64,000 bases of DNA, taken from positions 124,001 to 188,000 of the IMG/VR virus record IMGVR_UViG_3300037042_006844; one strand, given 5' to 3'. The position numbers and the translations under genes were made by a program. Of this stretch, positions 10,006-59,381 are shown one piece after another (position 1 is the stretch's first letter; the number at the start of each line of letters is the position of its first letter). The notes under the pieces were generated by a model. The model was given only the letters and a program-made list of their open reading frames with translations. It was not told the origin of the DNA and ran no database searches.

Positions 10006-10428
10006 ATGAGTGAACTAACAAACAATACATTTAAGAAGCATCTTGGACTGCTTCACAATCGTCTCAACGAAATCGCAACACACGAAGGCAGAAGTGGCGA
10101 TGAGGCAATCGGACAAATGAACACCGATGCCGAGAAAAGCCCAGAAAGCGTTTTGGCGTATCTTCAAAACGTCACAGACAAAGCTGGCAACCCAGATTTC
10201 AGTGGCGACTGGGATCATTATAGGGGAACATATTATTTCCACGTAGATTATCCTGGTAGCAGAATGTCATCGGCAGAAATCCATGTCACTCCAAATAAAG
10301 GTGGCGGATCGCAATGGGAATTTCTAACAGTGCGCCCTCATCAAGTCAAAAGGGTGAATACACTTCAGGAAATTGGAGCTTTGGTCACTGACTGGCTGGA
10401 AAATCATGGTGCCGCCCCTGACGCTTGA
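10006..10428 (+). CDS. putative internal virion protein
   Basis: N-terminus TFKKHLGL..LNE shared with 26426-27004; TATTTAT upstream. Confidence 0.55.
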   Translation: MSELTNNTFKKHLGLLHNRLNEIATHEGRSGDEAIGQMNTDAEKSPESVLAYLQNVTDKAGNPDFSGDWDHYRGTYYFHVDYPGSRMSSAEIHVTPNKGGGSQWEFLTVRPHQVKRVNTLQEIGALVTDWLENHGAAPDA

Positions 10429-10481: not shown

Positions 10482-10510
10482 ACCTCGATCAAAACAGATC
10501 GAGGTTTTTT
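10482..10510 (+). terminator. rho-independent terminator
   Basis: acctcgatc-aaaaca-gatcgaggt + T-run. Confidence 0.7.
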
Positions 10511-10547
10511 GTTGTGTGCCATGCATAACATATAGTTATTATAACAT

Positions 10548-11003
10548 ATGAAGTATCTAAAATCATTAGCATTGGCAACGTTGCTGGGTATATCGACCCT
10601 ATCAGCACAAACATTTACCAATGTAGTTGATCAGCGAGTTGAATCGCACGAAGAGTTCAATTACAACTACAAAAACCACTCCCAGACCATAACCAATCCG
10701 TTGACATTTTTTGTTACGTTTTCGGATGGTTCATCCACGAATATATACGGCAAATTGACTCACCAAGATAAAGAGCAAGTTGTGTTCTCTGGTATTGCCA
10801 GCACCAATCCGACGGTAATTATTCAACCAATCGATAATTTTTATGGAACCAAGCAAGGCAGTGAATGGAAATTCTATTTTCACACCAGTTCTCCACTAAC
10901 GGTTCACAGTTGGGGTGTATCAACGATCCCAGAGCCGTCTGTGTTGACAATCACTGGTCTTGCGATGATAGCATTTGCATTTTTCAGGAGGCACAGAGTA
11001 TGA
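10548..11003 (+). CDS. PEP-CTERM sorting domain protein
   Basis: Sec signal; C-terminal IPEPS + TM + RRHR. Confidence 0.85.
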   Translation: MKYLKSLALATLLGISTLSAQTFTNVVDQRVESHEEFNYNYKNHSQTITNPLTFFVTFSDGSSTNIYGKLTHQDKEQVVFSGIASTNPTVIIQPIDNFYGTKQGSEWKFYFHTSSPLTVHSWGVSTIPEPSVLTITGLAMIAFAFFRRHRV

Positions 11004-11158
11004 TGCGCCGATGCTGCGAAAAACATGTGATCAGCAAAAACGGGTTTTATCTTGGAAGTGAGAAGGTTCGCTTTCCAAACCTCAACACGCAGTTATGTAT
11101 GGTTTTCATTGTGCTTGTGAGCATAGGCATTGGCATTGCACTGGGCATGTATAAATAG
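11000..11158 (+). CDS. small membrane protein
   Basis: coupled start; C-terminal TM. Confidence 0.4.
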   Translation: MMRRCCEKHVISKNGFYLGSEKVRFPNLNTQLCMVFIVLVSIGIGIALGMYK

Positions 11159-11240: not shown

Positions 11241-12302
11241 ATGACTGTTATCATCATACCATGTTTCACGTATTACTACGAGACTGAACCTCTCGAAAGA
11301 ATTCGGATATTGACATATGAATTCATTTTGAAAAACATCGACCGATATGCTGCCGATGTCGTTTGTTTTGTAGGACGAAACTGTGGATTTGAAACGCACA
11401 CCGAAATGCGTGGCAACAAAGAGCTTCGCTTCATTAACACTGCTGACTACGATCCCATGTATGGCGACGGTAGAATTGAGTTTAACACGTTTGCTGCGGT
11501 CAACACAATGTCTTCTGGAGACAAACTGATACTGGCTGATCTTGATCTCATCGTATACGATCCAGCGTATTTTACAGAAATCTTCAGTGACCTTGATAAA
11601 TACGACGTGGTGAGCACATTGGATACCCATGCAACGATGCCAACGTATCGCAAATTTAACGATAGACCCGCAAATGGTTGGATAAACGATGATCATCGTG
11701 ATCTGTCTTACCGATTAGAAATCATGAGACCCACTCCATATCGGGATGGAAAATCAAGATTTGCTCATTTTACGTTTGCATGTAGCTATGACTTTTTCAA
11801 GAGTGTTACCAACACACCCGCCACTATGGACGATTTCACACGCCTCGTCGCAACGAAATTTCCAAACGCACGAATCAAAGAGATCATATCCCACAGAAAC
11901 ACAGTGGGGATTCGTTCATCAAACCCCGATCCAGAAAGTTTGGATACGGGTGGATTTTCGTTACCAGGAGATGGAAATGACGATGTGCGCTGCACCGAAG
12001 AATCATTCGCCAAAATCAAAGCGTTCCACATCGGAGCGTTTTCCCACATACCAATATCAGTTTTACATTTGCTGGGTCTGCGCCAAAATTCTATCATGGA
12101 CAGCGGCGACATCATTTTGATGCCATTTTACATTTGCTGGGCAATCACCATGATGGACCGAGTTTATGATGATGCCACCAAAGCCAGATATTTGGCGTTG
12201 TTTGACACGGCACTGAAAAAATACAACATTGGACTTGACACTCCATATTTCAAACGATATCATCAACTATTCAAATCATACTACCGAACCCATTTGTTAT
12301 AA
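11241..12302 (+). CDS. putative GT-A glycosyltransferase
   Basis: N-terminal VIIIP strand and LILADLDL DxD motif. Confidence 0.5.
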   Translation: MTVIIIPCFTYYYETEPLERIRILTYEFILKNIDRYAADVVCFVGRNCGFETHTEMRGNKELRFINTADYDPMYGDGRIEFNTFAAVNTMSSGDKLILADLDLIVYDPAYFTEIFSDLDKYDVVSTLDTHATMPTYRKFNDRPANGWINDDHRDLSYRLEIMRPTPYRDGKSRFAHFTFACSYDFFKSVTNTPATMDDFTRLVATKFPNARIKEIISHRNTVGIRSSNPDPESLDTGGFSLPGDGNDDVRCTEESFAKIKAFHIGAFSHIPISVLHLLGLRQNSIMDSGDIILMPFYICWAITMMDRVYDDATKARYLALFDTALKKYNIGLDTPYFKRYHQLFKSYYRTHLL

Positions 12303-12306
12303 CCAT

Positions 12307-12900
12307 ATGAACGATGCTACTACCATTAAGAGAATCGCCGCTTTGCTGCAAACTCCTCGCTTGGAATTCAAATCCAAACAAAGCAACACCACAAAAGGAT
12401 TGTATGATTTGATCATCAAACACGTCCGCCCCACCCATACTGTTGTGGAGTTGGGCAGTTTCGCTGGAGTCAGCAGTGAGTTGTTTGCCATCCACTGCGA
12501 AACGTTGTATTGTATTGATCGTTGGGAACCGTATTGGGAAATCAAACAAACCGAACGTATGCAAACTGCCGAGCAACGTTTCGACAATATGACCAAAAAC
12601 TATACCAACATTGTCAAAATGAAAAGTGATAGTTTGGATGCCGTGAAGAATTTTGAGGACGAAAGCATTGATCTCATTTACATTGACAGTGATCATAGCA
12701 GTGCTCAAGTGGACAAAGAAATCAGAGCATGGATGCCCAAAGTCAAACCAACGGGATTGATAGCCGGGCACGATATCAATATGCCCACGGTATTCAAAGT
12801 GGTGATGCATTATTTTGATCCCACTTTGGTAGAGTTCTTCAATGACACGAGTTGGATCACTCAGAAAAATAACATGAACGTGTGGACAGCACCAGCTTAA
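12307..12900 (+). CDS. class I SAM methyltransferase (Methyltransf_24-like)
   Basis: VELGSFAGVS, IYIDSDH, PKVKPTGLIAGHD. Confidence 0.85.
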   Translation: MNDATTIKRIAALLQTPRLEFKSKQSNTTKGLYDLIIKHVRPTHTVVELGSFAGVSSELFAIHCETLYCIDRWEPYWEIKQTERMQTAEQRFDNMTKNYTNIVKMKSDSLDAVKNFEDESIDLIYIDSDHSSAQVDKEIRAWMPKVKPTGLIAGHDINMPTVFKVVMHYFDPTLVEFFNDTSWITQKNNMNVWTAPA

Positions 12901-12907
12901 AAAACAT

Positions 12908-13753
12908 ATGAGCATCAAAATTGATTGCGACATCATCACGGTTGCGCCAAGACATGTGGATTATCCAGCGTATCGTAAACGGCTCAAGGAGTTGGCACCC
13001 CATTTCAACAAAATCCATTATTTGTTCAACTACCACAGCGCAATACCTTACGCAGTTAATTACAGCGAAATGATTCGGCAAGACATCCCATTCTGTAATT
13101 TTATTGATGTGGATATGGTAAACACCAATGCTTCAGCACATTGGTATCATGCCACGTTAACAGAAGCCTTCAAACATTGCACCAGCAAATACATCCTAAT
13201 ACTTGAGCCAGATTTTATTTTTAATGTATCTGAAGTAATCGCCGCAATGTCAACGTTCGACCGAGATGTGTTGACATATTCTGTGCGTCCCACGCCGAGC
13301 GATTGTGAAGGGAACAAAAGCTTTTTTAGAATATCCCCATCATTTTTCATGGTTAGACGATCATTGGCATTGCAAACGGCACAAGATTTTAGCGAAGGAA
13401 TGACTGACAATTATACGGACCTTGATTTTCGAGAAGATGGAAGCACCGTATTGGTTAGATATCCACTAGAAAAGTTGAAATTGGTTGATTGTTTCAACAA
13501 ATTTACCAATGATTTGTGGAAGCTGACTACAGATATTTGTTTGTTGACCGATTTGGGAATAACCAACTATTTTCATTATGCGGGGATCACGCACAATTTC
13601 TCGTTGTGCAGCCACGGAAATTTCGGCGGGTTGCACAATACAGATAATTTTGTGCAGTATCTCAAAGACAATTTGGATGTGCCCGGAGTGGCTTATCATC
13701 CAGATTATATTAATAATACCCACACACATCTCGCAGCAATTGCCGCTCTATAA
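12908..13753 (+). CDS. putative GT-A glycosyltransferase-like protein
   Basis: YILILEPDF ExD motif; paralog of next gene. Confidence 0.55.
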   Translation: MSIKIDCDIITVAPRHVDYPAYRKRLKELAPHFNKIHYLFNYHSAIPYAVNYSEMIRQDIPFCNFIDVDMVNTNASAHWYHATLTEAFKHCTSKYILILEPDFIFNVSEVIAAMSTFDRDVLTYSVRPTPSDCEGNKSFFRISPSFFMVRRSLALQTAQDFSEGMTDNYTDLDFREDGSTVLVRYPLEKLKLVDCFNKFTNDLWKLTTDICLLTDLGITNYFHYAGITHNFSLCSHGNFGGLHNTDNFVQYLKDNLDVPGVAYHPDYINNTHTHLAAIAAL

Positions 13754-13778
13754 GGTTCTCAATTGATATTTATATCAT

Positions 13779-14630
13779 ATGAGCACTATTATCAATTGCG
13801 AAATTATCACTGTCGTCCCACGTTGTGTTGACTATCCCGCATTCAGAAAACGTCTCAAAGAGTTGGAACCATACGTCAACAAAATTCATTATGTTTTCAA
13901 CTATCATGCTGCCAGCCCGTCATCGTTCAACTACAGCGGTTTGATTCAACAAGACATGCCATTTTGTAATTTCATCAACATTGATGCGGCTACAATCCAT
14001 GACCATTGGTATAATGTGGGAATGAAAACCGCATTCGATCAATGCACCAGCGATTATGTTTTGTTTTTGGAGCCAGATTTTATATTCAAAACATCGGAAA
14101 TACTGAACGTGCTTTCAACATTTACCCGAGATATATTGACGCATGGTAATCGTCCCACGGTAAATTTTGGAGACGTTGACACATCGTATCCTTGTTTGTC
14201 CCCATCGTTTTTTATGGTGAAACGATCATTGGCATTGCAAACATCATTGGAATTCGGAGAAGGAACCATCGCTGATTACACCAATATTCAATTCAACATG
14301 GATGGAACCACTTCTTTGGTGGCACCAGCCGAAACCACTCGTCGGGTGGACTGTTTCAATAGATTCACAAACGATTTGTTCAAACTCACCACCGACATTT
14401 GTTTGTTGAGTGATCTTGGCATCACCAATTATTATCATTACAACGGCATCACTCATAATTTCACGTTGTGTCGCATGGGGGAGTATGCTACGTTGCACAA
14501 CGCAGAAGAGTTTGTGTGGTATCTTAATGAGAATTTGAATTTGGACGGGATTGCCTACGACCAAGCTTATATTGACGAGAGCAACACATATCTTGCTGCA
14601 ATCGGATCAAACAACAACAACAATAATTAA
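13779..14630 (+). CDS. putative GT-A glycosyltransferase-like protein (tandem paralog)
   Basis: YVLFLEPDF; colinear similarity to 12908-13753; TATTTAT upstream. Confidence 0.55.
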   Translation: MSTIINCEIITVVPRCVDYPAFRKRLKELEPYVNKIHYVFNYHAASPSSFNYSGLIQQDMPFCNFINIDAATIHDHWYNVGMKTAFDQCTSDYVLFLEPDFIFKTSEILNVLSTFTRDILTHGNRPTVNFGDVDTSYPCLSPSFFMVKRSLALQTSLEFGEGTIADYTNIQFNMDGTTSLVAPAETTRRVDCFNRFTNDLFKLTTDICLLSDLGITNYYHYNGITHNFTLCRMGEYATLHNAEEFVWYLNENLNLDGIAYDQAYIDESNTYLAAIGSNNNNNN

Positions 14631-15131: not shown

Positions 15132-15235
15132 AATCACCTAACTGTTTTATATAGATCGAAAATCCCGTCAACTTTCGCTGACGGGATTTTTGTTTTCCTT
15201 GACTTCATAAAAAGCGGGTGTATCTTGGTATCAAG

Positions 15236-15700
15236 ATGATAATTATAAAAGACAACTGCAACATTTTCGATGGTGGTGCTCAAGCCATCATTCATCAAGC
15301 CAACTGTTTCAACACGATGGGTAGTGGAATTGCCCGTCAGATTCGTGAACTCTATCCAGAGGCGTATGCTGCGGATTGCATGACAGACCGAGGAGATCGG
15401 CGCAAGCTGGGTCATTTTAGCTGGACAAAGACCGGCGATGGTAAGTTTCACATCTATAATTGCTATAGCCAATACGAATATGGCAGAGAACGTAGGCACA
15501 CCAATTACGAAGCAATTTACACGGGGCTTACTGACATCAAAGCACACGCTGAGTCGCATGGTCTGACCACGTTGAGTCTGCCGCATATGATGGGTTGTAT
15601 GTTGGGTGGCGGCAGTTGGAGAATTGTCGCTGCAATTATCGATGAGATTTTCTCCACCGATCCAGAAACGGCGTTGTATATCTGCAAATACAATCCTTAA
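15236..15700 (+). CDS. macro domain (ADP-ribose binding/hydrolase) protein
   Basis: IIHQANCFNTMGSGIA and GCMLGGGSW motifs; leaderless promoter. Confidence 0.9.
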   Translation: MIIIKDNCNIFDGGAQAIIHQANCFNTMGSGIARQIRELYPEAYAADCMTDRGDRRKLGHFSWTKTGDGKFHIYNCYSQYEYGRERRHTNYEAIYTGLTDIKAHAESHGLTTLSLPHMMGCMLGGGSWRIVAAIIDEIFSTDPETALYICKYNP

Positions 15701-15713
15701 AATAAAAAAACAT

Positions 15714-16064
15714 ATGAAAAATAGACCAGCAGTAGTTACGTTATTTGATAAAAACCGATGGGACAGCTATAAAGAGCGTTCTTATCAACCGTTTAATTGT
15801 GAAACATGGCAGAGTCTATTACGTTCTGACTTAGCAATTAGTGTGGATTACATCAACCAAACATTTACTGTGGTTAAAAATAGATATGGGTATTATGATA
15901 AAATCAAAAATGCTCCAATGAATTTGATGACCACGTTTATTTTCGATCCAGAATTGGATACGATGGAAAAACTTGGCAAATTTGGTCAGAAACCGTCAGA
16001 CGTTGGTATTACTAATAATAATAAACCTCAACAAACACTATTTGCATGGGAGGCACCGCATTGA
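15714..16064 (+). CDS. hypothetical protein
   Basis: ORF in operon. Confidence 0.55.
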   Translation: MKNRPAVVTLFDKNRWDSYKERSYQPFNCETWQSLLRSDLAISVDYINQTFTVVKNRYGYYDKIKNAPMNLMTTFIFDPELDTMEKLGKFGQKPSDVGITNNNKPQQTLFAWEAPH

Positions 16065-16804
16065 ACACCACATTGGAACTTGGCACTTTCGTAAACACGG
16101 TCGCCGTAAAAAATCATCCATTCAAAAAACTGGTGGCACATCACAAATGCGCCACTCCATTTGAATACATCATCGAAATTCTGCCAAAATGTAGTCCGAC
16201 AGGACCGTGGATTGCTGGTGGGGCATTGTTACGCACATACACTGGACAGCCTCTTGACAGCGATGTTGATGTGTTTTTTCAAAACAAAGAGCAGTGTGAT
16301 AGGTTCATCACCACCATTACAAGTGGTGCCTACGGTGGATCGATGGAAGATCGCAAGAAAAATCAATACACTGTGGAAACCCGGTTCAGCAACCAATGGC
16401 ACACCACAATCACCATGAACTACATGGGTCGGGACTGGAAGATTCAGTGCATTACATTCGTGTTTTTTAAGACCATTAATGAATTGTTTGAATCATTTGA
16501 TTTCGATGTGTGCATGATGGCATATGACGGTAATGAGTTGTATGTCAACAACACCACATTTGATGCAATCGAAAACAAAATGGTTAAGTTGATGAAAATC
16601 AACTATCCCAGTATTACACTAAAACGACTTGTCAAATACATGCGTCAGGGGTATAATGTTGATGACGCGGACGTTACAATGCTCGTCGCCAGTTTCCGAG
16701 GACCGAAGGAACCTGTTGGCATTATGGATGAAAGTGGTGAAAACGGAGGAAGGTGGGCAAAAATATCAAAAACCAACAATTGGTATATAAATTTGAGGCG
16801 ATGA
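16046..16804 (+). CDS. nucleotidyltransferase, CCA-adding/poly(A) polymerase head-like (start possibly TTG 16061)
   Basis: WIAGGALLR, DSDVDVF, FDFDVC, RLVKY..QGY. Confidence 0.75.
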   Translation: MGGTALNTTLELGTFVNTVAVKNHPFKKLVAHHKCATPFEYIIEILPKCSPTGPWIAGGALLRTYTGQPLDSDVDVFFQNKEQCDRFITTITSGAYGGSMEDRKKNQYTVETRFSNQWHTTITMNYMGRDWKIQCITFVFFKTINELFESFDFDVCMMAYDGNELYVNNTTFDAIENKMVKLMKINYPSITLKRLVKYMRQGYNVDDADVTMLVASFRGPKEPVGIMDESGENGGRWAKISKTNNWYINLRR

Positions 16805-18988: not shown

Positions 18989-20122
18989 ATGAAAACCTGC
19001 ATTTACCCCGGAAGTTTTGACCCAGTTACATTCGGACATGTTGATATTATCAACCGTGCAGCCAGCACGTTTGACAAAGTTATTGTTGCGGTTGGGATCA
19101 ACAGCAGCAAAAAATATACATTCAAAACTGAACAACGCATACAGTTTCTTAAAAACAATATCAAGCAGAGTAATGTATGTGTAATGCCATTCGATGGATT
19201 GCTGGCGGATTTTGCATACGAAAACAATGCCAAGACCATTATCAAAGGTGTTCGCAACAACCAAGATTTTGATTATGAAAGATTGTTGCACGAAATCACC
19301 ATCACACAGCAAGCTGGAATTGACACACATATTCTGGTGGCAGATCAAAAGTTGAGCCACATCAGCAGCACTGCCGTAAAAGAACTGTGCAAATTTCAAG
19401 GGTTAATTCATGAATATGTTCCCTATGATGTCAAGGAAGCATTGGAGTGGGTGCTGAATGGGCAATTTATTGTGGGAGTCACTGGAGAAATTGGCATGGG
19501 CAAAAGCTATGTCAGTTCAAAGATCGTCGAAAAAACGGATGGCTGGCTTGGATATGTGCATCCAGTGACAAATGTGGATTTGGATAAAGTGGCGCACGAA
19601 TTGTATGAATCGGATGCTCCAGCCCATTTGGAATTGCGAGAAAATATCATTGAACGGTTTCAAATGAAAAGTGGCTTCAGCCGAAAAGAGTTGGGCGATG
19701 TTGTGTTCAATGACATCAATAAACTACAACAACTCAATACTTTGATTCGCACACCACTACTCACATTGCTGCGCAAGAAAATCAGAGAGCACAAGGGTTT
19801 GATTTTGTTGAATGGAGCATTGCTGGTTGAAGGCAACTACTTGTCGCTTTGCAACAACAATGTGGTGGTAGTAGAATCAACAGAGCAGCAACAATTGGAA
19901 AATCTGGAACGTCGTGGGTTGACCGAAAAACAAGTTGAACGTCGATGGGCAAGTCAACTGACCACAGATGGAAAAATCAGACAGATCAACAGAGAAATTG
20001 AAAAGCATGGTCATGGCAAGTGCATCAAATACCAAAATGTTTACGTTGATCCATATCAGGACCATATGAACACGTTTTTGATCAATCCATTGTATAACAT
20101 GATGAGCAATCTTGAGAAATAA
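18989..20122 (+). CDS. coaD-coaE: bifunctional phosphopantetheine adenylyltransferase / dephospho-CoA kinase
   Basis: YPGSFDPVTFGH, KGVR..DFDYE, ISSTAVKE then GVTGEIGMGKS, D.D..AH, R.ELG..VF. Confidence 0.85.
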   Translation: MKTCIYPGSFDPVTFGHVDIINRAASTFDKVIVAVGINSSKKYTFKTEQRIQFLKNNIKQSNVCVMPFDGLLADFAYENNAKTIIKGVRNNQDFDYERLLHEITITQQAGIDTHILVADQKLSHISSTAVKELCKFQGLIHEYVPYDVKEALEWVLNGQFIVGVTGEIGMGKSYVSSKIVEKTDGWLGYVHPVTNVDLDKVAHELYESDAPAHLELRENIIERFQMKSGFSRKELGDVVFNDINKLQQLNTLIRTPLLTLLRKKIREHKGLILLNGALLVEGNYLSLCNNNVVVVESTEQQQLENLERRGLTEKQVERRWASQLTTDGKIRQINREIEKHGHGKCIKYQNVYVDPYQDHMNTFLINPLYNMMSNLEK

Positions 20123-21671: not shown

Positions 21672-23282
21672 ATGAAAAAACTAGTAAAATGCCCGCCCCT
21701 GCCGAGAATGGCGAAATCGCTGCAAAATACAGATCATGATCCATACACAGCAACCGCCGATATTATTGATAACAGCATCGATGCTGATGCTACAACAATA
21801 AAACTGGATGTTTGCGTGGAAAATAAAGAATTTGTTGTTAGAATTATCGACGATGGATTTGGTATGGATGTGGACGGCTTGCTTGCGGCAATGACTTATG
21901 GCGATCATCGATCTGGAGATGGTGGTCATGGCAAGTTTGGTTTGGGGTTAAAAACTTCCGCAACCAGTATAGGTAATCGATTTGAAGTCCACACAAGAGA
22001 CGAAGACGGCAAAATTCTTCGAGGTAGTTTTGATGTGGACGAGCTTATCGCCGAAGAGGACCCTGACCATCAGTGGGAACATGAAATTAGCGATGAAATT
22101 GGCGACGAAGACGTTTTGTGGTTCAATGAATGTGTGGGGACTGGAACTGGAACAATAGTCACTATAACAAAAATCGACCGAACTAATGCGTCTCAATTTG
22201 CAACGCGTATGAAACAGCATTTGGGACAAGTTTACCGTAACTATTTGGCACCTTCAAAAGATGCAACTATTCCGGGTAAAATCAAAATGTATGTCAATAA
22301 TGCTCTGATTTATGCAGTAGACCCGCTGCTTCGGCATATACCATCCACAAAACCGTATGAAATTCCAATTGAGCTTGCTCCTGGAGAAGTGGTTCACGCA
22401 ACTATAGTCAAACTTGGTAAACTTGAAGCTGAATCAGATAAAGTCGTCGATGAAAATGATGATGACTACCAAAATAATCTCAACACAAATATTCGGAATC
22501 AAGGTGTATATGTCATGAGAAATGATCGGGAGATCATGTCGGCTGATAAAAAGGTGTTTGCGTTTACTTGGCCTGGAAAAGGACACAACAGTATGAATTA
22601 TATTCGAGTGGAATTAGCATATAGTTCAGAACTGGATAAACATTTTCAGCTAAACCATAATAAAACCGCTATTCAAATCCCAAGTCAGAGTATCCGAGAT
22701 AAAATCAAAAGTGCTTTAGTTAATCCGATTAAAGAAATTAAAAGGCAGATAGACGAAGAAAAAGCCGCCGTTCCAGATGGTAAAATGCAGGAAATATTTG
22801 ATGCCATCAATGCTACCCTAATTGAAAAACGGAGAACTCTTATTCTTCCAAAAGGAAAGAGCGAGACCCGTCAGCCGAGCGGCGGAACCAACAATTCTGG
22901 GTCTATACAACCGAAAAACAGTGGCAGGAAAAGAGGCGTGGGGAGCAATCCCAATTTGAATCGAAAAGAAATTGTTCCAACTATCGGTGTTGTTTCCAAC
23001 GGAAAGGGCGGCGCAATATTCGAATACGGACTCAATCTTGATGACGGCAAGCCCGATCAAATGTATGTTAATTGGAACACAGATCATCCATTTTATCAAA
23101 AATTTGTGATTAACCACGCCCCCGATCAACTGATTGCGACGACATATTTGATAATTGGATTAGCAGCCGCATTTCAAATGGAACAGGGCAATTGTTGTTC
23201 TGATGAAAACGACAAATTGGTCGATAATTTGATGGAGAGAATTTCTACCGCCATATCTCAAAATATGAGAACATTATCCTAA
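21672..23282 (+). CDS. MORC-like GHKL ATPase
   Basis: DIIDNSIDA, DDGFGM, GKFGLGLK, GTGT; S5-like QGVYVMRNDREI; NTDHPFY. Confidence 0.85.
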   Translation: MKKLVKCPPLPRMAKSLQNTDHDPYTATADIIDNSIDADATTIKLDVCVENKEFVVRIIDDGFGMDVDGLLAAMTYGDHRSGDGGHGKFGLGLKTSATSIGNRFEVHTRDEDGKILRGSFDVDELIAEEDPDHQWEHEISDEIGDEDVLWFNECVGTGTGTIVTITKIDRTNASQFATRMKQHLGQVYRNYLAPSKDATIPGKIKMYVNNALIYAVDPLLRHIPSTKPYEIPIELAPGEVVHATIVKLGKLEAESDKVVDENDDDYQNNLNTNIRNQGVYVMRNDREIMSADKKVFAFTWPGKGHNSMNYIRVELAYSSELDKHFQLNHNKTAIQIPSQSIRDKIKSALVNPIKEIKRQIDEEKAAVPDGKMQEIFDAINATLIEKRRTLILPKGKSETRQPSGGTNNSGSIQPKNSGRKRGVGSNPNLNRKEIVPTIGVVSNGKGGAIFEYGLNLDDGKPDQMYVNWNTDHPFYQKFVINHAPDQLIATTYLIIGLAAAFQMEQGNCCSDENDKLVDNLMERISTAISQNMRTLS

Positions 23283-34503: not shown

Positions 34504-34579
34504 CATATTCAAACCCAAGTTTTGAAAAAAAGCGTTTGACTTCTTATCAAACGCTGCTAAGATGAGTTTATCGCTGAGA

Positions 34580-37012
34580 ATGAAAACTATCGCAACCAAT
34601 AACACAGTCACAAACAGTCCAAACCTTACTTCGACTGGATTTACCATCCGTCCGAAGAATTTGGGAAAAATCATCAATATCGTTGAGAACGACATCTATT
34701 CTGATAAAGTTCTCGCCGTTATCCGAGAATATTCCTGCAATGCCTACGATGCCAATATCGAAGCTGGCAAGCGGGAGACTCCCATCGTTGTTTCTCTACC
34801 ATCACGTTTGAGCAGTGAGTTCAAAGTTCGTGATTACGGCAATGGTTTGACCGAAGCTGAAATTCATGAGATTTATACCTCCTACGGTGAATCCACCAAA
34901 GAGGATTCCGATGATTATATCGGTCAGCTTGGAATTGGTAGCAAGAGCGGCTTTGCTTATGGTGAGAATTTCGTTGTGACCAGTTGGAAAAACGGAGTCA
35001 AAACCATTTACAACGCCGTAAAAGGCACCAATGAGCGTCAGATGGTGAAGCTGTTCAGCCTACCTTCCGATGAACCCAGTGGTATTGAAGTGACCATTCC
35101 TGTTAAAAACGGGGATGAGGTATCATTCAAAAACAAAAGCATTGAGTTTTTCAAGTATTGGAAAATCCAACCCAAGCTAATTGGTGCGAGCCAGCAAGAA
35201 ATCGACTCTTTCCAAACCCCAGTAATTCTTGAAGGCAAAGGTTGGCAAATTACCAAATCGTTCAACAGTAAATGGTCGGGTGTGTCTGCGATTGCCGTCA
35301 TGGGCAACATTTCATATCCTATTCAGTGGGGGTTGGTGCAAGATAAACTGCGCACCCATTTGGATTCGATGACCCAGGATAGAACGCTTTTCATGAAGTT
35401 TCTGCCGTTTATCACCAACAATCGGTTCGTGATTCGGTTCGGCATTGGGGACGTTCAGATGGCTCCCAGCCGAGAAGCATTGCAATACACTGACCGCACC
35501 GTTAATGGCATTGTCAAACGCCTTTTGGAAATCAGCAAAGAAATCGAAGCAGTGGTCCTCAATATTTTCAACAATTGCACAACGTTGTGGGAATACAAAG
35601 GTCATCTCAATAACATTTTTGGAAGAGCTTTGGGTGGTGGTTATTACTCTGCTCACGAGACTGTGTTCTATAGTATGTCAAACATTGAAGTGCTTTATGA
35701 TTTGGTTAAAAACAAATTGCATTTCAACGGAGCCAACGTGGTCAGCGCACATTACGAAAATGTTTCTTATTGGGATGTCAACAAAGGAAAAGTATCGATG
35801 GTGCTCCAACCAAAAGCATCTCCATCATTATCGCCAGGAGCAACTTTAAGTAGTAGTATGCAAGAGCCTGCCTACGAGTCAATCGTAACTAGCCATTACG
35901 TTAATAGCCGCGATAAATTGGTAACTGAGTCTCCGAGATTTGGAAACCAGTATTTCAAAATCATTGCCACTCCCCATGCACATTTTGTGATCATGGATAT
36001 TGATCGCAAAAGCAATGTCAAGCAGTGTCTCAAATGGTATATCAGTGAAGGCGCAAAAAATCCTAAATTGAATATTCAGCATCGTGCTCCGAAACTGGTT
36101 TATACACTACAATTTGGAAATGATGCGGTGCGTGCTGCATTTTTCAATGCGTTTAACATCAAAGGTGCTACAATTGTCAATTTCAGCCAAATATTTGAAC
36201 TGTATAAACCATTGATTCCAAAACGGCAGAGTTCTGCTACCAAGCTGGAAGATGATACTGTGTATTGCGGCATGATTAACCCTGGGAACCATTTCAGCTA
36301 CTATCGGTCCCGCAACACGCTCGACGCTCTGGCAGAGTGGAGAGCCAACGTTGATCTCAAAGCTGAAAAAGGGTTTTATGTTGATATGAGCAGTGCCAAC
36401 GGGAATGTTGTGATCAATGGTATGGTGATTACGCCTTGGACATTTTTCAGCAATATCAGTATGCTAAAAAATGCTGGTGTTGATTTTGGTCAAATTACTC
36501 GGGTTCAACTATTCGGTAGTCGCATTATGAATGGGAATAAATTTGATCGCAACAAACAAAATTGGACAAATTTTGTTACATACATGGAACAGTTTCTCCG
36601 GGGCTACGACAAAAGTCCGTTCGTGGCTTCGTCTGTTATACATAAAAGAGTTAATGATCCACATCGACCGTTTTATATTCACAAAGATGCATTGGCGCAG
36701 ATCGCGCAGTATTTTTCAAAAAATCATTTGTTGCACGAATTCCTCGGTGCGTTTCCTTGGATGCCGACCAACATTCAAGATCGGATTGGTATTTTGAATT
36801 CGTTGCACGTTGAGATTGTGCATGGAAAGGATGTTGCGGTTAAAGACACGATGGAACATTATTTTGACACGATCATCAAGAAATATCCCATGCTTAAAAC
36901 ACTGCTATTTGTCCCCAGTTATAAAGATGTGCAGGGTCAGGTCCCAGTGACGATTGTCCAAGAAATTGTTGATTATATTAAACTTGTTGACAGCCTTCAA
37001 AGTAACGGCTAA
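34580..37012 (+). CDS. rIIA: RIIA-like protein
   Basis: IYSDKVLAVIREYSCNAYDA, RDYGNGL, GQLGIGSKS, PSREALQY. Confidence 0.9.
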   Translation: MKTIATNNTVTNSPNLTSTGFTIRPKNLGKIINIVENDIYSDKVLAVIREYSCNAYDANIEAGKRETPIVVSLPSRLSSEFKVRDYGNGLTEAEIHEIYTSYGESTKEDSDDYIGQLGIGSKSGFAYGENFVVTSWKNGVKTIYNAVKGTNERQMVKLFSLPSDEPSGIEVTIPVKNGDEVSFKNKSIEFFKYWKIQPKLIGASQQEIDSFQTPVILEGKGWQITKSFNSKWSGVSAIAVMGNISYPIQWGLVQDKLRTHLDSMTQDRTLFMKFLPFITNNRFVIRFGIGDVQMAPSREALQYTDRTVNGIVKRLLEISKEIEAVVLNIFNNCTTLWEYKGHLNNIFGRALGGGYYSAHETVFYSMSNIEVLYDLVKNKLHFNGANVVSAHYENVSYWDVNKGKVSMVLQPKASPSLSPGATLSSSMQEPAYESIVTSHYVNSRDKLVTESPRFGNQYFKIIATPHAHFVIMDIDRKSNVKQCLKWYISEGAKNPKLNIQHRAPKLVYTLQFGNDAVRAAFFNAFNIKGATIVNFSQIFELYKPLIPKRQSSATKLEDDTVYCGMINPGNHFSYYRSRNTLDALAEWRANVDLKAEKGFYVDMSSANGNVVINGMVITPWTFFSNISMLKNAGVDFGQITRVQLFGSRIMNGNKFDRNKQNWTNFVTYMEQFLRGYDKSPFVASSVIHKRVNDPHRPFYIHKDALAQIAQYFSKNHLLHEFLGAFPWMPTNIQDRIGILNSLHVEIVHGKDVAVKDTMEHYFDTIIKKYPMLKTLLFVPSYKDVQGQVPVTIVQEIVDYIKLVDSLQSNG

Positions 37013-38713: not shown

Positions 38714-40111
38714 ATGAATAAAAACATCTGTTTAACTACTGACAGCTACAAGCTAAACCATTGGAATCAATACCCTCGTAACACCGAGATTGTGTATAGT
38801 TATTTCGAGTGTCGCAAAGGAGCAACCTTCGCCGAAACCCCGTTCTTCGGGCTTCAATACATTATTAAAAGCCACCTTGAGGGCGCAGTCGTGACCAGGG
38901 AGAATATTGAGAAGGCAGCTAGGCTTTGCAAATTCCATTTTGGCGACGAGCGTTACTTCAACCGTGAGGGCTGGGAATACATCCTCAATAATTGGGGAGG
39001 TAAACTTCCAGTCGTTATCAAGGCTGTTGAGGAGGGAACTGTGGTTCCGGTCAACAACGTGTTGATGACCATTGAGAATGTGGGCGGTGCCATGACGGCT
39101 TGGCTCACCAATTTCCTTGAGACGATTTTGTCCCAAGTATGGTATCCCACAACCGTTGCAGCTTTGAGCCGTGAGGTCAAAAAGAATATCAAAGAATATC
39201 TTGATTTAACCAGTGAGGGCGGACTGCTCAATTTCGGACTGCATGATTTTGGGTTCCGGGGGGCATCGTCTTGGGAATCTGCTGGTATTGGTGGTGCGGC
39301 TCATCTAATCAACTTCCTTGGCACCGATACTTTGGTCGCGATGGAGGTCGCCATGAACTATTACAATGCAAACCTCGAAGGATTAGCATACAGTGTGGCA
39401 GCAACCGAGCACAGTGTGATGACTGCTTTGGGCAAGGACGGTGAGGAAACGGTCGTCGAGAATCTGCTCAATGAATATCCCACGGGTATTCTTTCTGTGG
39501 TCTCCGATAGCTACGACATCTACAATTTTGTTAACAACATCGTTGGACGCAAATTTAAGGATTGGATTCTTGAGCGTGATGGTGTGTTCGTGGTTAGACC
39601 AGATTCCATTACTCCGAGCCATCCAACTCCTGAGCAGGAAATGGTTTGGATTATGTGGAGTCTTTGGGACAATTTTGGTGGCATTATAAACAGCAAGGGA
39701 TTTAATGTTATCAATCCCAAGGTTCGTGTTCTTTGGGGCGATGGAATCGATTTGGAAGGTATCAAAAAGATTCTGTGTGCTGTTGCCGATGCTGGATTTG
39801 CAACCGAAAATATCGCATGTTTCGGAATGGGTGGCGGACTCTTACAGAAAGTCAATCGTGATACACAGCGTTGTGCATTCAAATCGTCTGCACAGTATCG
39901 CAACGGTCAGTGGTTTGATATTTTCAAGAGTCCCAAGGATATTTCCAAGGCTTCCAAAAAGGGCAAGCTCAAGCTCACCAAGATTGACGGCAAGTTCGTT
40001 ACTGTTGGTGAAAACGATCCCGGTGAGGATTATTTGAAGGTTGTGTTTACGAATGGTGTGCTGGTCAAGGAAATTGACTTTGCAACCGTTCGCAAGAACG
40101 CTGCTCTATGA
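38714..40111 (+). CDS. nadV: nicotinamide phosphoribosyltransferase
   Basis: TDSYK, LHDFGFRG, ATEHS, SVVSDSYD, RPDS, GDGI, FGMGG.L. Confidence 0.95.
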   Translation: MNKNICLTTDSYKLNHWNQYPRNTEIVYSYFECRKGATFAETPFFGLQYIIKSHLEGAVVTRENIEKAARLCKFHFGDERYFNREGWEYILNNWGGKLPVVIKAVEEGTVVPVNNVLMTIENVGGAMTAWLTNFLETILSQVWYPTTVAALSREVKKNIKEYLDLTSEGGLLNFGLHDFGFRGASSWESAGIGGAAHLINFLGTDTLVAMEVAMNYYNANLEGLAYSVAATEHSVMTALGKDGEETVVENLLNEYPTGILSVVSDSYDIYNFVNNIVGRKFKDWILERDGVFVVRPDSITPSHPTPEQEMVWIMWSLWDNFGGIINSKGFNVINPKVRVLWGDGIDLEGIKKILCAVADAGFATENIACFGMGGGLLQKVNRDTQRCAFKSSAQYRNGQWFDIFKSPKDISKASKKGKLKLTKIDGKFVTVGENDPGEDYLKVVFTNGVLVKEIDFATVRKNAAL

Positions 40112-42212: not shown

Positions 42213-42287
42213 GGGGTCTAAGCTTTAATGGTGAAGCAAGCGGCTTTTAACCGCTAGAAGACGGATCGTTACCGTCAGGCCCTACCA
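42213..42287 (+). tRNA. tRNA-Lys(TTT)
   Basis: cloverleaf, anticodon loop ct-ttt-aa, encoded CCA; atypical T-loop ATCGTTA. Confidence 0.85.
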
Positions 42288-42303
42288 AATTTACAGTTAA
42301 AAT

Positions 42304-42379
42304 GGGGTTATCGTCTAATGGCTAGGACGGGAGACTTTCAATCTCCAAATCGTGGGTTCAATTCCCCGTAGCCCTACCA
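42304..42379 (+). tRNA. tRNA-Glu(TTC)
   Basis: ggaga-ct-ttc-aa-tctcc, GTTCAATT, CCA. Confidence 0.9.
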
Positions 42380-42387
42380 TTTTCACT

Positions 42388-42610
42388 GTCAGGTCAATAA
42401 TGACAGACCGTTAGCAATAAGCGGTGTCAATGTGCAAAAAAATTCAAGTGGTATAGCACATCTGACGTTATAGATTCCACTTGATGGTGGAGGGGCGCGG
42501 AATAGCCCCCTAGACAAACAGATTGACGGATTGATATAATCGAAGGATATTATATCTAATGCAACAGATAAATCCGATATAATGGTTTGTCGAGAGTTTG
42601 ACATAACTCT
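42388..42610 (+). ncRNA. unknown multi-stem pseudoknotted RNA
   Basis: at least 8 helices including 8-bp loop pairing tcaagtgg/ccacttga. Confidence 0.6.
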
Positions 42611-42623
42611 ACAACAACATATG

Positions 42624-42699
42624 TCTGGTTGCGGGGATGAGCCAATGGTGTCTCGGTTATCCGATTGGATCGAGATTCAATAACCCTACAATCGGACCA
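42624..42699 (+). ncRNA. tRNA-sized CCA-ended non-cloverleaf RNA
   Basis: ctggttg/caatcgg stem + ACCA; no T-arm. Confidence 0.5.
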
Positions 42700-42709
42700 A
42701 TTTTATAAT

Positions 42710-42786
42710 TGCGGAATAGAGTTCTGGTGAACTCCGGTGTCTCATAAGCACTCGCTAGAAAAGTTCGATTCTTTTTTCCGCTACCA
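42710..42786 (+). tRNA. tRNA-Met(CAT), partly initiator-like
   Basis: ct-cat-aa loop; 1:72 mismatch; lacks 3 G-C anticodon-stem pairs. Confidence 0.8.
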
Positions 42787-42791
42787 ATTTC

Positions 42792-42885
42792 GGTTCTGTA
42801 GTTTAACTGGTAAAACCCCATACTTATAATATGGTAATCGCTAGATGTGCGTGACTTCTCGGTTCGAATCCGAGCAGAACCACCA
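42792..42885 (+). tRNA. tRNA-Ile(TAT) with long variable arm
   Basis: ccata-ct-tat-aa-tatgg, ~23-nt V region, GGTTCGAATCC, ACCA. Confidence 0.8.
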
Positions 42886-42949
42886 AATTTATGACGAACG
42901 TGTCATAAAAAAACAAAGTTACATTGAATTAATACTAATATAATAGAAT

Positions 42950-43276
42950 ATGAAAAAGATACTTCTAACAGTTGCAACCCTCTCTCTTCTTTTGACCGCT
43001 AGTGCGGTTGATACCAAGGAACTCTACGATTCACAATGCTCCAAGTGTCATGGAACAAATGGCAATGGTGTGACCAAGATGGGTCAAAAGCTCAATGCGA
43101 AGGATTGGACCGATGTCAAGATTCAAGCCGCAATGACCGAGACCAACATGGTCAAGGCAATTAAGGTGGGCATTAAAGATGCCGAGGACAAGACTCGCAT
43201 GAAGGCATATTCAGATATGACTGATGCCGATGTGACGAATTTGGTTACGTATATCAAAACCTTCAAAAAGCAATAA
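42950..43276 (+). CDS. class I c-type cytochrome, exported
   Basis: signal peptide, CSKCH, distal RMKAY Met. Confidence 0.9.
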   Translation: MKKILLTVATLSLLLTASAVDTKELYDSQCSKCHGTNGNGVTKMGQKLNAKDWTDVKIQAAMTETNMVKAIKVGIKDAEDKTRMKAYSDMTDADVTNLVTYIKTFKKQ

Positions 43277-43294
43277 CATCGTATATAACATCGT

Positions 43295-43624
43295 ATGAAG
43301 AAATCATTGATGCTCGGGGTTTTGATTCTCAGCGGAATGTTGTGTCAAGCACAAAACGCTGGAACCAACGAATTGTATAACAGCAAGTGCAGCAAGTGCC
43401 ATGCAAAAGATGGCTCGGGCAACACACTGATGGGCAAAAAGTATAGTGCGAAAAACTATACAGATGCAGCCGTCCAAAACAAGCTTACTGATGAAGCTTT
43501 TGATAAGTCCCTCAAAGAGGGTTACACCGATGCCGAAGGCAAGAAAGTAATGCAGGCTTTTCCAGAGCTTACGGCACTGGAGCGCAAGGAACTCATCAAA
43601 ACGATGCGGTCCTTCAAGAAATAA
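43295..43624 (+). CDS. class I c-type cytochrome, exported (paralog)
   Basis: signal peptide, CSKCH, distal VMQAF Met. Confidence 0.9.
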   Translation: MKKSLMLGVLILSGMLCQAQNAGTNELYNSKCSKCHAKDGSGNTLMGKKYSAKNYTDAAVQNKLTDEAFDKSLKEGYTDAEGKKVMQAFPELTALERKELIKTMRSFKK

Positions 43625-43643
43625 GATTGACATATCAATTTAT

Positions 43644-43716
43644 GCGGAATTAGTGTCATGAGGAGCACGGCTATCGACCAGATAGCAAGGTTGGTGCAAG
43701 TCCAAATTCCGCTCCA
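43644..43716 (+). tRNA. atypical tRNA-Gly-like (ACC)
   Basis: gcggaat/attccgc + T + CCA; loop cg-acc-ag; T-loop TGCAAGT. Confidence 0.65.
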
Positions 43717-43724
43717 CTTTTTCA

Positions 43725-43800
43725 GGGCTCTTAGCTTAATTGGTTAAGCAGCAAACTCATAATTTGTTGAGTGGGGGTTCGAGTCCCTCAGGGCCCACCA
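43725..43800 (+). tRNA. tRNA(CAT), probably Ile2
   Basis: gggctct acceptor, ct-cat-aa, GTTCGAGT, ACCA. Confidence 0.85.
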
Positions 43801-59157: not shown

Positions 59158-59168
59158 AACGTATTTTT

Positions 59169-59381
59169 TTAGTCTTTCAAGTATTGCAAATTTTTGGTGA
59201 AACACTGAAAGCATAATTGCCCAGCACCTTCCACATAATGGTTGCGAAACTCAATGTGCAATGCTTTTGGAACACTCGTTTTTTTATTGCATAGAATGCA
59301 ACGTTCAAACTGAGAGTCTTTTTCAGACTCGACGGGAACATTGCCAGCAATGATGGCTTTCTGTGGAACATTATTATTCAT
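59169..59381 (-). CDS. small zinc-finger phage protein
   Basis: CILC...R..YVEGAGQLC..C. Confidence 0.7.
   Translation of the reverse strand: MNNNVPQKAIIAGNVPVESEKDSQFERCILCNKKTSVPKALHIEFRNHYVEGAGQLCFQCFTKNLQYLKD

What the first reader, a model, noticed from the sequence alone, without database searches (positions are those of the whole stretch)
10548..11003. Phage-encoded PEP-CTERM protein
Seen: signal peptide, Thr/Ser-rich body and IPEP-TM-basic tail. Known: this tail is processed by exosortase in EPS-producing diderms and is abundant in Verrucomicrobia. Inference: the phage uses host sorting to display a surface protein (receptor masking or exclusion), next to a glycosylation cluster.
Basis: partly seen in the sequence, partly recalled or inferred. 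Interest (0 to 1): 0.6.

Follow-up and report, generated by a model that had tools for sequence, protein, structure and literature searches.

The report
Phage PEP-CTERM protein with membrane partner
A 300-kb freshwater jumbo phage encodes a small secreted protein whose tail matches the bacterial PEP-CTERM sorting signal, always followed by a tiny membrane-protein gene; this suggests, but does not prove, that some phages feed a protein of their own into the host's exosortase surface-sorting pathway.

Summary
The ORF at 10548-11003 (+) is real. It encodes 151 aa:
- a Sec-type signal peptide;
- a folded 105-aa beta-sandwich;
- a textbook PEP-CTERM tail (IPEPS, a 16-residue hydrophobic helix, RRHRV).

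TIGR02595 passes its cut-off only just, and Pfam PF07589 falls below its own. A simple PEP / helix / basic-tail rule is met by 1 of 1659 six-frame ORFs of the phage, against 0.05 per shuffled genome.

The window belongs to a 303.6-kb T4-like myovirus from lake, river and sediment metagenomes. The phage has no exosortase.

An exhaustive profile search found only about 25 relatives. All 24 aligned ones keep the signal peptide and the tail. Every context of 3 kb or more looks like phage DNA; none looks bacterial.

The body is not a Ser/Thr-rich linker. It has the P-domain fold of furin and kexin (Z 12.5).

A 50-85 aa single-pass membrane protein starts within 3 nt of the stop codon in every lineage where the downstream DNA could be read.

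The neighbouring glycosyltransferase-like genes are real, but they are not conserved next to the gene.

The host, exosortase processing and the biological role (exclusion or surface remodelling) remain untested.

The parts
10482..10515 (+). Intrinsic-terminator-like hairpin with a T-run, separating the cassette from the upstream gene (10006-10428)
   Evidence: 9-pair stem with 5 GC pairs, 6-nt loop, T-rich tail. One such site in the region does not exceed chance (shuffles give a mean of 1.5). A similar hairpin with a T-run lies upstream of the distant homologue in L052.
10531..10542 (+). Two overlapping -10-like hexamers (TATAGT, TATTAT) ending 12 and 6 nt before the ATG; possible promoter for a near-leaderless mRNA. 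This is inference only.
   Evidence: Read directly from the sequence. The motif ATATAGTTATT recurs upstream of the homologue in L052. The homologues in L011 and L014 have TTGAC-type -35 boxes with -10 boxes instead. Genome-wide, sigma-70-like promoters abut start codons.
10548..10607 (+). Signal peptide, residues 1-20; predicted signal peptidase I cut after Ala20, leaving Gln21 as the new N-terminus
   Evidence: Hydrophobicity is conserved while the sequence varies. Residue -1 is A, G or S, and Gln at +1 is present in at least 90% of 24 relatives.
10608..10925 (+). Mature body, residues 21-126: eight-stranded jelly-roll of the proprotein-convertase P-domain type
   Evidence: AF2 with the 24-sequence alignment gives pLDDT 85.9. 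Matches: furin P domain Z 12.5, rmsd 2.2 over 107 residues; Kex2 11.8; FlhE 10.8; Aeromonas ASP 9.1-9.9; carbohydrate-binding modules 9.1 or less. 4 of 24 members give weak PF01483 hits.
10926..11000 (+). PEP-CTERM sorting domain, residues 127-151: IPEPS (PEP at 10929-10937), hydrophobic helix (10938-10985), basic tail RRHRV (10986-11000). Stop codon at 11001-11003.
   Evidence: P128 and E129 are invariant and P130 is present in at least 90% of 24 relatives at roughly 25-98% identity. All NCBIfam hits to the tail are PEP-CTERM families, apart from single-member hits to related C-terminal sorting signals.
11000..11158 (+). Small partner gene, 52 aa. Its ATG overlaps the stop codon (ATGA). It has a basic N-terminal segment of about 30 aa with the motif S-x-x-G-x-[YC]-[LI]-G, then a single C-terminal transmembrane helix.
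   Evidence: A homologous ORF starts 3 nt before to 3 nt after the stop in all 12 loci that have the downstream DNA (L012 holds only its first codons). Small genes of 50-55 aa are called at the same place in two lineages without DNA, and 70-aa genes in L053 and L054. There is one copy per phage, always adjacent to the PEP-CTERM gene.
11241..14630 (+). Context only: GT2-like 353-aa gene (11241-12302), Methyltransf_24 gene (12307-12900), 281-aa ORF (12908-13753) and a weakly GT2-like 283-aa ORF (13779-14630)
   Evidence: The adjacency is not conserved outside the closest relatives.

Best explanation
This is a phage-borne two-gene cassette aimed at the host cell envelope.

**Gene 1** is exported through Sec, and its signal peptide is removed before Gln21. 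This leaves a compact P-domain-type beta-sandwich held on the outer face of the inner membrane by the C-terminal helix, with RRHRV in the cytoplasm. The invariant PEP motif next to the helix is then recognised by the host's exosortase, since the phage has none. The exosortase cuts off the anchor and passes the domain to the envelope or exopolysaccharide layer. There the domain acts as a binding module that changes the surface of the infected cell. The most likely purpose is to keep further phages, or the phage's own progeny, from adsorbing or injecting.

**Gene 2** is translationally coupled to gene 1. It encodes a tail-anchored single-pass membrane protein with a conserved cytoplasmic motif. 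It most likely works with gene 1 in the membrane, through helix-helix contact or control of hand-over to the exosortase.

**Shown:** gene structure, motif conservation, fold, restriction to phage contexts, conserved coupling of the two genes, and absence of a phage exosortase.

**Inferred:** export, cleavage by an exosortase, final location, binding function, partner interaction, and the exclusion or masking role.
For: - All four sequence features that define PEP-CTERM proteins are present (definition in PMC12188702).
- TIGR02595 scores above its cut-off.
- 21 of 24 relatives hit PF07589, best E 2.1e-7.
- NCBIfam hits to the tail are PEP-CTERM families.
- P-E-P is invariant or nearly so across relatives down to about 25% identity, while the helix sequence varies freely. 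A plain membrane anchor would not require this.
- The tripartite tail is unique in the phage and is expected 0.05 times by chance.
- dN/dS is 0.18.
- The body has a binding-module fold: P domain at Z 12.5, then carbohydrate-binding modules.
- A bacterial cluster with the same P-domain plus PEP-CTERM architecture exists.
- The cassette has the shape of a moron: terminator-like hairpin upstream (not above chance on its own), its own -10 elements, and sigma-70-type promoters in L011 and L014.
- It occurs in unrelated genomic neighbourhoods of phages with 35-49% GC.
- The small partner gene is coupled in every readable lineage.
Against: - The host is unknown, so nobody has shown that it has an exosortase.
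- Pfam PF07589 is below its gathering score for this protein (17.0 against 20.7), and TIGR02595 passes by 0.3 bits in the whole-protein scan.
- No RNA or protein data exist: no RNA run holds the locus.
- The nearest cultured relatives by capsid protein infect Microcystis and Flavobacterium. They lack the cassette and any PEP-CTERM match.
- Flavobacterial XrtF substrates are predicted to be unlike PEP-CTERM (PMC10936215).
- The fold shows no function.
- The exclusion or masking role rests on analogy only.
Confidence: 0.45

Rival explanations
1. Inner-membrane device that is never processed. The tail only anchors the P-domain on the periplasmic face. With the small tail-anchored partner it forms a membrane complex that blocks incoming DNA injection or tunes lysis timing, in the way T4 Imm/Sp or the RI/RIII antiholins do. 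No exosortase is involved.
For: - There is no linker between the last beta-strand and the helix.
- The partner is conserved and membrane-embedded.
- One relative lies within a few kb of rIIA/rIIB-like genes.
- The nearest cultured relatives infect hosts for which classical PEP-CTERM use is doubtful (Flavobacterium) or was not checked here (Microcystis) (PMC10936215).
Against: - The invariance of P-E-P in 24 divergent sequences is unexplained by an anchor role.
- All tail hits are to exosortase-type sorting signals.
- The role is by analogy to T4, recalled from general knowledge and not tested.
Confidence: 0.2
2. Exosortase decoy or inhibitor. The phage protein occupies the host exosortase through its PEP-CTERM tail, perhaps locked there by the small partner. 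Host PEP-CTERM proteins then fail to mature, which weakens the EPS or floc matrix and eases the release or spread of progeny.
For: - The tail is a bona fide recognition signal.
- The partner gene has a conserved cytoplasmic motif that could contact a polytopic enzyme.
- PEP-CTERM proteins and exosortases are needed for floc and biofilm integrity (PMC12188702 introduction; PMC10936215).
Against: - Nothing in the sequence marks the tail as uncleavable.
- A globular P-domain would be unnecessary for a decoy.
- There is no experimental precedent.
Confidence: 0.15
3. Lysis or virion component, for example a unimolecular spanin-like protein that bridges the inner and outer membranes.
For: The layout is an N-terminal export signal plus a C-terminal transmembrane helix, with a beta-rich periplasmic body of about 130 aa. 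This resembles the T1 gp11 architecture, recalled from general knowledge.
Against: - None of the 24 members has a lipobox Cys after the signal peptide.
- No endolysin or holin families were found in the neighbours.
- The gene lies far from the structural module at 1-70 kb of the genome.
Confidence: 0.04

Closest known systems
PEP-CTERM / exosortase substrates (TIGR02595, PF07589), e.g. the floc protein PepA (NF033554)
   Same: It has a signal peptide, a PEP motif, a transmembrane helix, a basic C-terminal tail, elevated Ser/Thr content and a small size. A weak alignment to the C-terminal half of PepA gives E 3e-5.
   Different: - It is encoded by lytic-type phages, one copy per genome, with no exosortase or EPS locus in cis.
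- No named PEP-CTERM subfamily reaches its cut-off (24 bits against 80 for PepA).
- It has a conserved small membrane partner.
Bacterial stand-alone P-domain proteins with PEP-CTERM (ESM Atlas cluster: PF01483 in 86% and PF07589 in 31% of members, commonest in Verrucomicrobiota)
   Same: Same two-part architecture and fold (TM-score 0.64 by the query).
   Different: No sequence relative from bacteria appeared in the exhaustive profile search at E up to 1e-3. The bacterial proteins are about 226 aa. Whether they have a partner gene is unknown.
Proprotein-convertase P domain (furin, Kex2, Aeromonas ASP; PF01483)
   Same: The fold matches at Z 12.5, 11.8 and 9.1-9.9, with rmsd 2.2-2.9 over 105-111 residues. 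The His, G-x-W-x-L and Trp core positions are conserved.
   Different: There is no attached protease domain. Sequence identity is 6-15%. The Pfam model is hit by only 4 of 24 members, below its threshold.
FlhE (PDB 4qxl), periplasmic flagellar protein
   Same: A stand-alone, secreted jelly-roll of the same size, Z 10.8.
   Different: FlhE has no membrane anchor or sorting signal, and its genomic setting is unrelated.
Phage superinfection-exclusion membrane proteins (T4 Imm and Sp) and prophage-encoded sortase substrates of Gram-positive bacteria (from general knowledge, not tested here)
   Same: They are small envelope proteins carried as mobile accessory genes by phages. In the second case the phage protein uses a host sorting enzyme.
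   Different: There is no sequence or fold relation, and the sorting pathway differs (exosortase rather than sortase). The function here is unproven.

Membership tests
PEP-CTERM sorting-domain proteins (TIGR02595 / PF07589) | N-terminal Sec signal peptide | tested here: met
   Heuristic only: basic n-region, h-region at residues 6-18, A|Q cleavage site. The pattern is conserved in 24 relatives, and the AF2 model shows a low-confidence N-terminal helix. No dedicated predictor was available.
PEP-CTERM sorting-domain proteins (TIGR02595 / PF07589) | Pro-Glu-Pro motif directly before a transmembrane helix, followed by a basic cluster at the extreme C-terminus | tested here: met
   IPEPS, then hydrophobic residues 131-146, then RRHRV. 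All 24 of 24 relatives pass the same rule; in the phage 1 of 1659 six-frame ORFs passes.
PEP-CTERM sorting-domain proteins (TIGR02595 / PF07589) | Score at or above the curated HMM cut-off | tested here: inconclusive
   TIGR02595 scores 16.3 bits (cut-off 16), and 19.1 bits in the six-frame search. PF07589 scores 17.0 bits, below its gathering score of 20.7. Among relatives, 21 of 24 hit PF07589, best E 2.1e-7.
PEP-CTERM sorting-domain proteins (TIGR02595 / PF07589) | A cognate exosortase in the same cell | not testable with these tools
   There is no PF09721 match in the 303.6-kb phage record, which is 89% complete. The host is not identified. Sigma-70-type promoters argue against a Bacteroidota host.
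PEP-CTERM sorting-domain proteins (TIGR02595 / PF07589) | C-terminal cleavage and sorting dependent on the exosortase | not testable with these tools
   This needs an experiment. No RNA or proteome data exist for the locus.
Flocculation protein PepA (NF033554) and other named PEP-CTERM subfamilies | Whole-protein score above the equivalog or subfamily cut-off | tested here: not met
   PepA scores 24 bits against 80; NF038129 scores 18.6 against 65; the others are lower.
Proprotein-convertase P domain (PF01483) | P-domain jelly-roll fold | tested here: met
   Furin Z 12.5, rmsd 2.2, 107 residues aligned. It is the top hit both in the re-ranked Foldseek list and in the Foldseek-independent search.
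Proprotein-convertase P domain (PF01483) | Pfam model above its gathering score, and attachment to a subtilisin-like catalytic domain | tested here: not met
   P0001 gives no PF01483 hit. 4 of 24 relatives give weak hits, best E 0.0016. The protein has no other domain.
Unimolecular spanin (T1 gp11 type) | N-terminal lipoprotein signal with a lipobox Cys, plus a C-terminal transmembrane helix | tested here: not met
   The C-terminal helix is present, but none of the 24 members has a Cys at the cleavage site.

The most novel reading that the evidence does not exclude
Phages of exosortase-bearing bacteria carry a dedicated, mobile two-gene module: a P-domain protein with a PEP-CTERM tail, plus a tail-anchored partner. 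The module plugs into the host exosortase pathway to rewrite the infected cell's surface or matrix. This would be the first case of viral exploitation, or sabotage, of exosortase sorting. The partner would be a previously unknown accessory factor of that pathway.
Probability: 0.3. Interest if true: 0.7.

Novelty: new variant of a known kind. Interest (0 to 1): 0.55.

Why it matters
Exosortase/PEP-CTERM sorting is widespread in environmental diderm bacteria, but it is poorly understood biochemically. Its acceptor, its cleavage chemistry and its accessory factors are largely unknown.

A compact phage-borne substrate with a well-folded body and a conserved partner would help in three ways:
- It would be a convenient probe for the pathway: small, single-domain and easy to tag.
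- It would extend the list of host envelope machineries that phages co-opt.
- It could explain part of the 'dark' accessory gene content of freshwater jumbo phages.

The full-text searches run here found no description of phage PEP-CTERM proteins. The only mention was in passing, for Dehalococcoides mobile elements.

Tried and rejected
**Searches for relatives**
- Close relatives of P0001 were sought in the cultured-phage collection, IMG/VR and GTDB genomes. Nothing beyond the same lineage was found.
- Long hits of the profile search (P0021, P0022, P0025, P0028, P0030) are repeat proteins, or fused gene calls with ten PEP-CTERM motifs. They are not kin.

**Host inference, all inconclusive**
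- The phage TnpB is only 45-47% identical to copies in an unnamed bacterial family. The reference genome of that family has an exosortase but no relative of the cassette.
- The capsid protein is 51% identical to Microcystis phage Mel-JY01, and 60% (over 76% of its length) to Flavobacterium phage immuto. The phage shares 67 and 54 ORFs with them at about 37% identity, so neither is a clear nearest relative.
- No psbA and no T9SS tail were found in the phage. The T9SS control rang nowhere, so that search is uninformative.
- The tmRNA is the standard one-piece type.
- PstS and the c-type cytochrome carry no lineage signal.
- 'Relatives' cannot be drawn for a virus record.
- Gln at +1 of the mature protein suggested the Bacteroidota 'Q-rule'. 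Only 2 of 7 predicted signal peptidase I substrates of the phage show it (my reading of the candidate list), and the promoters are sigma-70 type, so I dropped the idea.

**Structure and complex prediction**
- The first AF2 model, from 4 sequences, was too weak to use (pLDDT 56.6).
- A complex prediction of the two cassette proteins gave no verdict. It is evidence neither for nor against binding.
- A sequence search of the PDB with the family profile gave only chance-level hits.

**Other**
- The motif TAGTTNTTATA, shared by the two adjacent gene starts, occurs only 5 times in the genome. It is not a general promoter class.
- No genetic code other than table 11 was needed.

Full report
**1. The observation**

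The ORF at 10548-11003 on the + strand encodes 151 residues.
- The N-terminus has two lysines, a 13-residue hydrophobic core and a small residue before Gln21.
- The last 25 residues read IPEPS, then 16 uncharged hydrophobic residues, then RRHRV.
- The NCBIfam PEP-CTERM model TIGR02595 scores 16.3 bits against a cut-off of 16. In the six-frame search of the whole phage record it scores 19.1 bits and is the only match over the cut-off.
- Pfam PF07589 scores 17.0 bits, below its gathering score of 20.7.

These models are 24 positions long and ring weakly in most control genomes, so I added a rule-based test: PEP, an uncharged hydrophobic stretch, and at least two K/R in a short end. It is met by 1 of 1659 six-frame ORFs of the phage (this one) and by 0.05 ORFs per shuffled genome.

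S+T is 22.5% against a proteome mean of 12.7% (rank 11 of 344). The body is enriched in Ser/Thr but is not a low-complexity stretch.

**2. The replicon**

The window is bases 124001-188000 of a 303,564-bp IMG/VR virus record, 89% complete, 41% GC.
- It encodes rIIA, rIIB, NAMPT, DNA ligase and a tail-spike-like protein in the window.
- Elsewhere it encodes a T4-type major capsid protein, portal, sheath and baseplate wedge.
- ARAGORN tRNAs and a one-piece tmRNA.
- It has no exosortase.
- Public runs that hold the locus are lake-water, sediment and river metagenomes. None is an RNA run.
- Laying contigs of three independent studies shows the cassette intact in lake water. Parts of it are present in sediment and river samples. 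The only length change inside the ORF is an in-frame 9-nt insertion in the signal peptide.

**3. Relatives**

The word-index search found three clusters, at 98, 78 and 67% identity. The family scans left the body unexplained, and the claim of phage restriction rests on the absence of bacterial kin. I therefore ran the exhaustive profile search. Among 1.84 billion representatives, 29 proteins reach E 1e-3, and about 22 of them are 130-185 aa proteins with the same plan. The long hits are repeat proteins or fused gene calls.

In the 24-sequence alignment:
- F23, H72, W107, W122, P128 and E129 are invariant.
- Q21, L70, F98, G105 and P130 are present in at least 90%.
- The helix after PEP varies freely but stays hydrophobic, and the end stays basic.
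- All 24 pass the tripartite rule.
- 21 hit PF07589, best E 2.1e-7.
- NCBIfam hits to the tail are PEP-CTERM families, and none reaches a subfamily cut-off.
- dN/dS against the 67% homologue is 0.18.

**4. Where the relatives live**

Every context of 3 kb or more looks like phage DNA: dense, co-oriented small ORFans. Various contexts also carry homing endonucleases, rIIA/rIIB, DNA ligase, a GP88 family protein, a destabilase-type lysozyme, or a Macro domain and a Gad2-like protein. GC ranges from 35 to 49%. No context looks bacterial.

The nearest cultured phages by capsid protein are Microcystis phage Mel-JY01 and Flavobacterium phage immuto. Both lack the family and any PEP-CTERM match.

**5. 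The conserved partner**

The ATG of a second ORF (11000-11158, 52 aa) overlaps the stop codon as ATGA.
- A homologous small ORF starts between 3 nt before and 3 nt after the stop in every locus where the DNA is available.
- Gene calls of 50-55 aa sit at the same place in two lineages without DNA.
- The same holds in L052 and in L053/L054.
- A local HMM finds exactly one copy per locus, always adjacent to the PEP-CTERM gene.

The proteins share three features: a basic N-terminus, the motif S-x-x-G-x-[YC]-[LI]-G, and a single transmembrane helix. In the window's version the helix ends one residue before the C-terminus. By the positive-inside rule, the conserved part is cytoplasmic.

The glycosyltransferase-like neighbours are a different matter. 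They are shared only by the closest relatives, and the 353-aa GT2-like gene is already missing beside the 78% homologue.

**6. The body**

With the 24-sequence alignment AF2 gives pLDDT 85.9: eight strands between residues 22 and 126, then the C-terminal helix. The best structural matches are below.

| Match | Z | Notes |
|---|---|---|
| Furin P domain | 12.5 | rmsd 2.2 over 107 residues |
| Kex2 P domain | 11.8 | |
| FlhE | 10.8 | |
| Aeromonas serine protease P domain | 9.1-9.9 | |
| Carbohydrate-binding modules and other jelly-rolls | 9.1 or less | |

The ranking is the same whether or not Foldseek preselects the candidates.

Four of 24 relatives give weak PF01483 hits. The ESM Atlas shape search returns a bacterial cluster with P-domain plus PEP-CTERM, commonest in Verrucomicrobiota. 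The architecture therefore has a cellular counterpart, even though no bacterial sequence relative was found.

**7. Host and expression signals**

- The phage does not use Shine-Dalgarno sites: 7% of starts have one, against a 5.6% background.
- 47 of 344 upstream regions carry TTGAC-N16-18-TAnnnT, against 2.3 in shuffles and none in coding controls. Often the -10 box ends 6-9 nt before the ATG, which implies leaderless early mRNAs.
- The Bacteroidota -7 motif is not enriched.

Published work predicts that flavobacterial XrtF substrates are unlike PEP-CTERM (PMC10936215). Together with the promoter evidence, this argues against a Bacteroidota host. It is compatible with cyanobacteria, where PEP-CTERM proteins and cyanoexosortases are common (PMC12188702), and with Verrucomicrobiota, Planctomycetota or Proteobacteria.

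The cassette has a terminator-like hairpin upstream; one such site in the region does not exceed chance. It also has -10-like hexamers just before the ATG. Homologues in L011 and L014 have full sigma-70-type promoters. This suggests transcription by host polymerase, but it is inference. I could not name the host (see Tried and rejected).

**8. Interpretation**

The invariant PEP next to a freely varying helix is hard to explain unless a dedicated enzyme recognises it. The only known readers of this signal are exosortases. I therefore favour a phage protein that the host exosortase processes and delivers to the envelope or EPS layer, where a binding-type domain alters the surface.

Superinfection exclusion or receptor masking is the most economical purpose for a mobile early-type membrane cassette, but it is by analogy only.

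The rivals are:
- an unprocessed inner-membrane complex with the partner;
- an exosortase decoy;
- a spanin-like role, which is disfavoured because no member has a lipobox Cys.

The complex prediction gave no verdict and carries no weight.

**9. Novelty**

PEP-CTERM proteins are a known kind. Three things are new here:
- a family seen so far only in phage contexts;
- a P-domain body;
- an obligatory small membrane partner.

Literature searches found no description of phage PEP-CTERM proteins beyond a passing mention for Dehalococcoides mobile elements.

Noticed in passing
whole phage genome (G000), e.g. window 9037, 15236, 20394, 27638, 31341: 47 of 344 gene starts have a TTGAC-N16-18-TAnnnT promoter. 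In about half of these the -10 box ends 6-9 nt before the ATG, which implies leaderless early mRNAs. Shine-Dalgarno motifs are at background level (7% against 5.6%). The Bacteroidota -7 motif is not enriched.
   Followed up: partly
L053:4-169 and L053:305-595; also a 15.9-kb ENA contig without DNA: In a related phage lineage the cassette (189 aa plus 70 aa) lies between cas2 and cas1-cas4-cas7-csd1-cas5d-cas3 (type I-C), next to a CRISPR array of at least 3 repeats at 66-nt spacing. The helicase, 138-aa gene and cassette order matches the phage contig L052, so this is probably a phage-borne type I-C CRISPR-Cas locus.
   Followed up: partly
window 59411-60613 (-): An IS605-family TnpB/OrfB (Cas12f-like TNB domain) sits inside the phage. 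It is 45-47% identical to multi-copy elements in an unnamed bacterial family, whose reference genome has an exosortase.
   Followed up: partly
G000 72191-110554 and window 42213-43800: ARAGORN tRNA genes (two with an undetermined anticodon) and a one-piece tmRNA (Rfam RF00023, 116 bits) in the phage.
   Followed up: partly
window 42950-43276 (+); G000 201052-201903 (+): The phage encodes a secreted class I c-type cytochrome and a PstS-family phosphate-binding protein (TIGR02136, 245 bits).
   Followed up: partly
window 18989-20122, 38714-40111, 15218-15700, 16046-16804: NAD-related and anti-defence-looking genes: a cytidylyltransferase-like plus CoaE fusion, NAMPT, a Macro-domain protein and a Gad2-like nucleotidyltransferase.
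   Followed up: no
window 21672-23282 (+) and 34562-37012 (+): Besides rIIA (816 aa) there is a second HATPase_c_3 protein (536 aa), possibly an rIIA paralogue.
   Followed up: no
window 56515-59214 (-): An 899-aa protein with three Methyltransf_24 stretches. A single-domain relative (12307-12900) lies just downstream of the cassette.
   Followed up: no
residue 21 of P0001 and alignment A2: Gln at +1 of the predicted mature protein is present in at least 90% of the family. This suggests an N-terminal pyroglutamate. Only 2 of 7 predicted signal peptidase I substrates of the phage share it.
   Followed up: partly
L053:3818-3896: A tandem TTTTAG hexamer run lies just upstream of the cassette in the CRISPR-bearing relative.
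   Followed up: no
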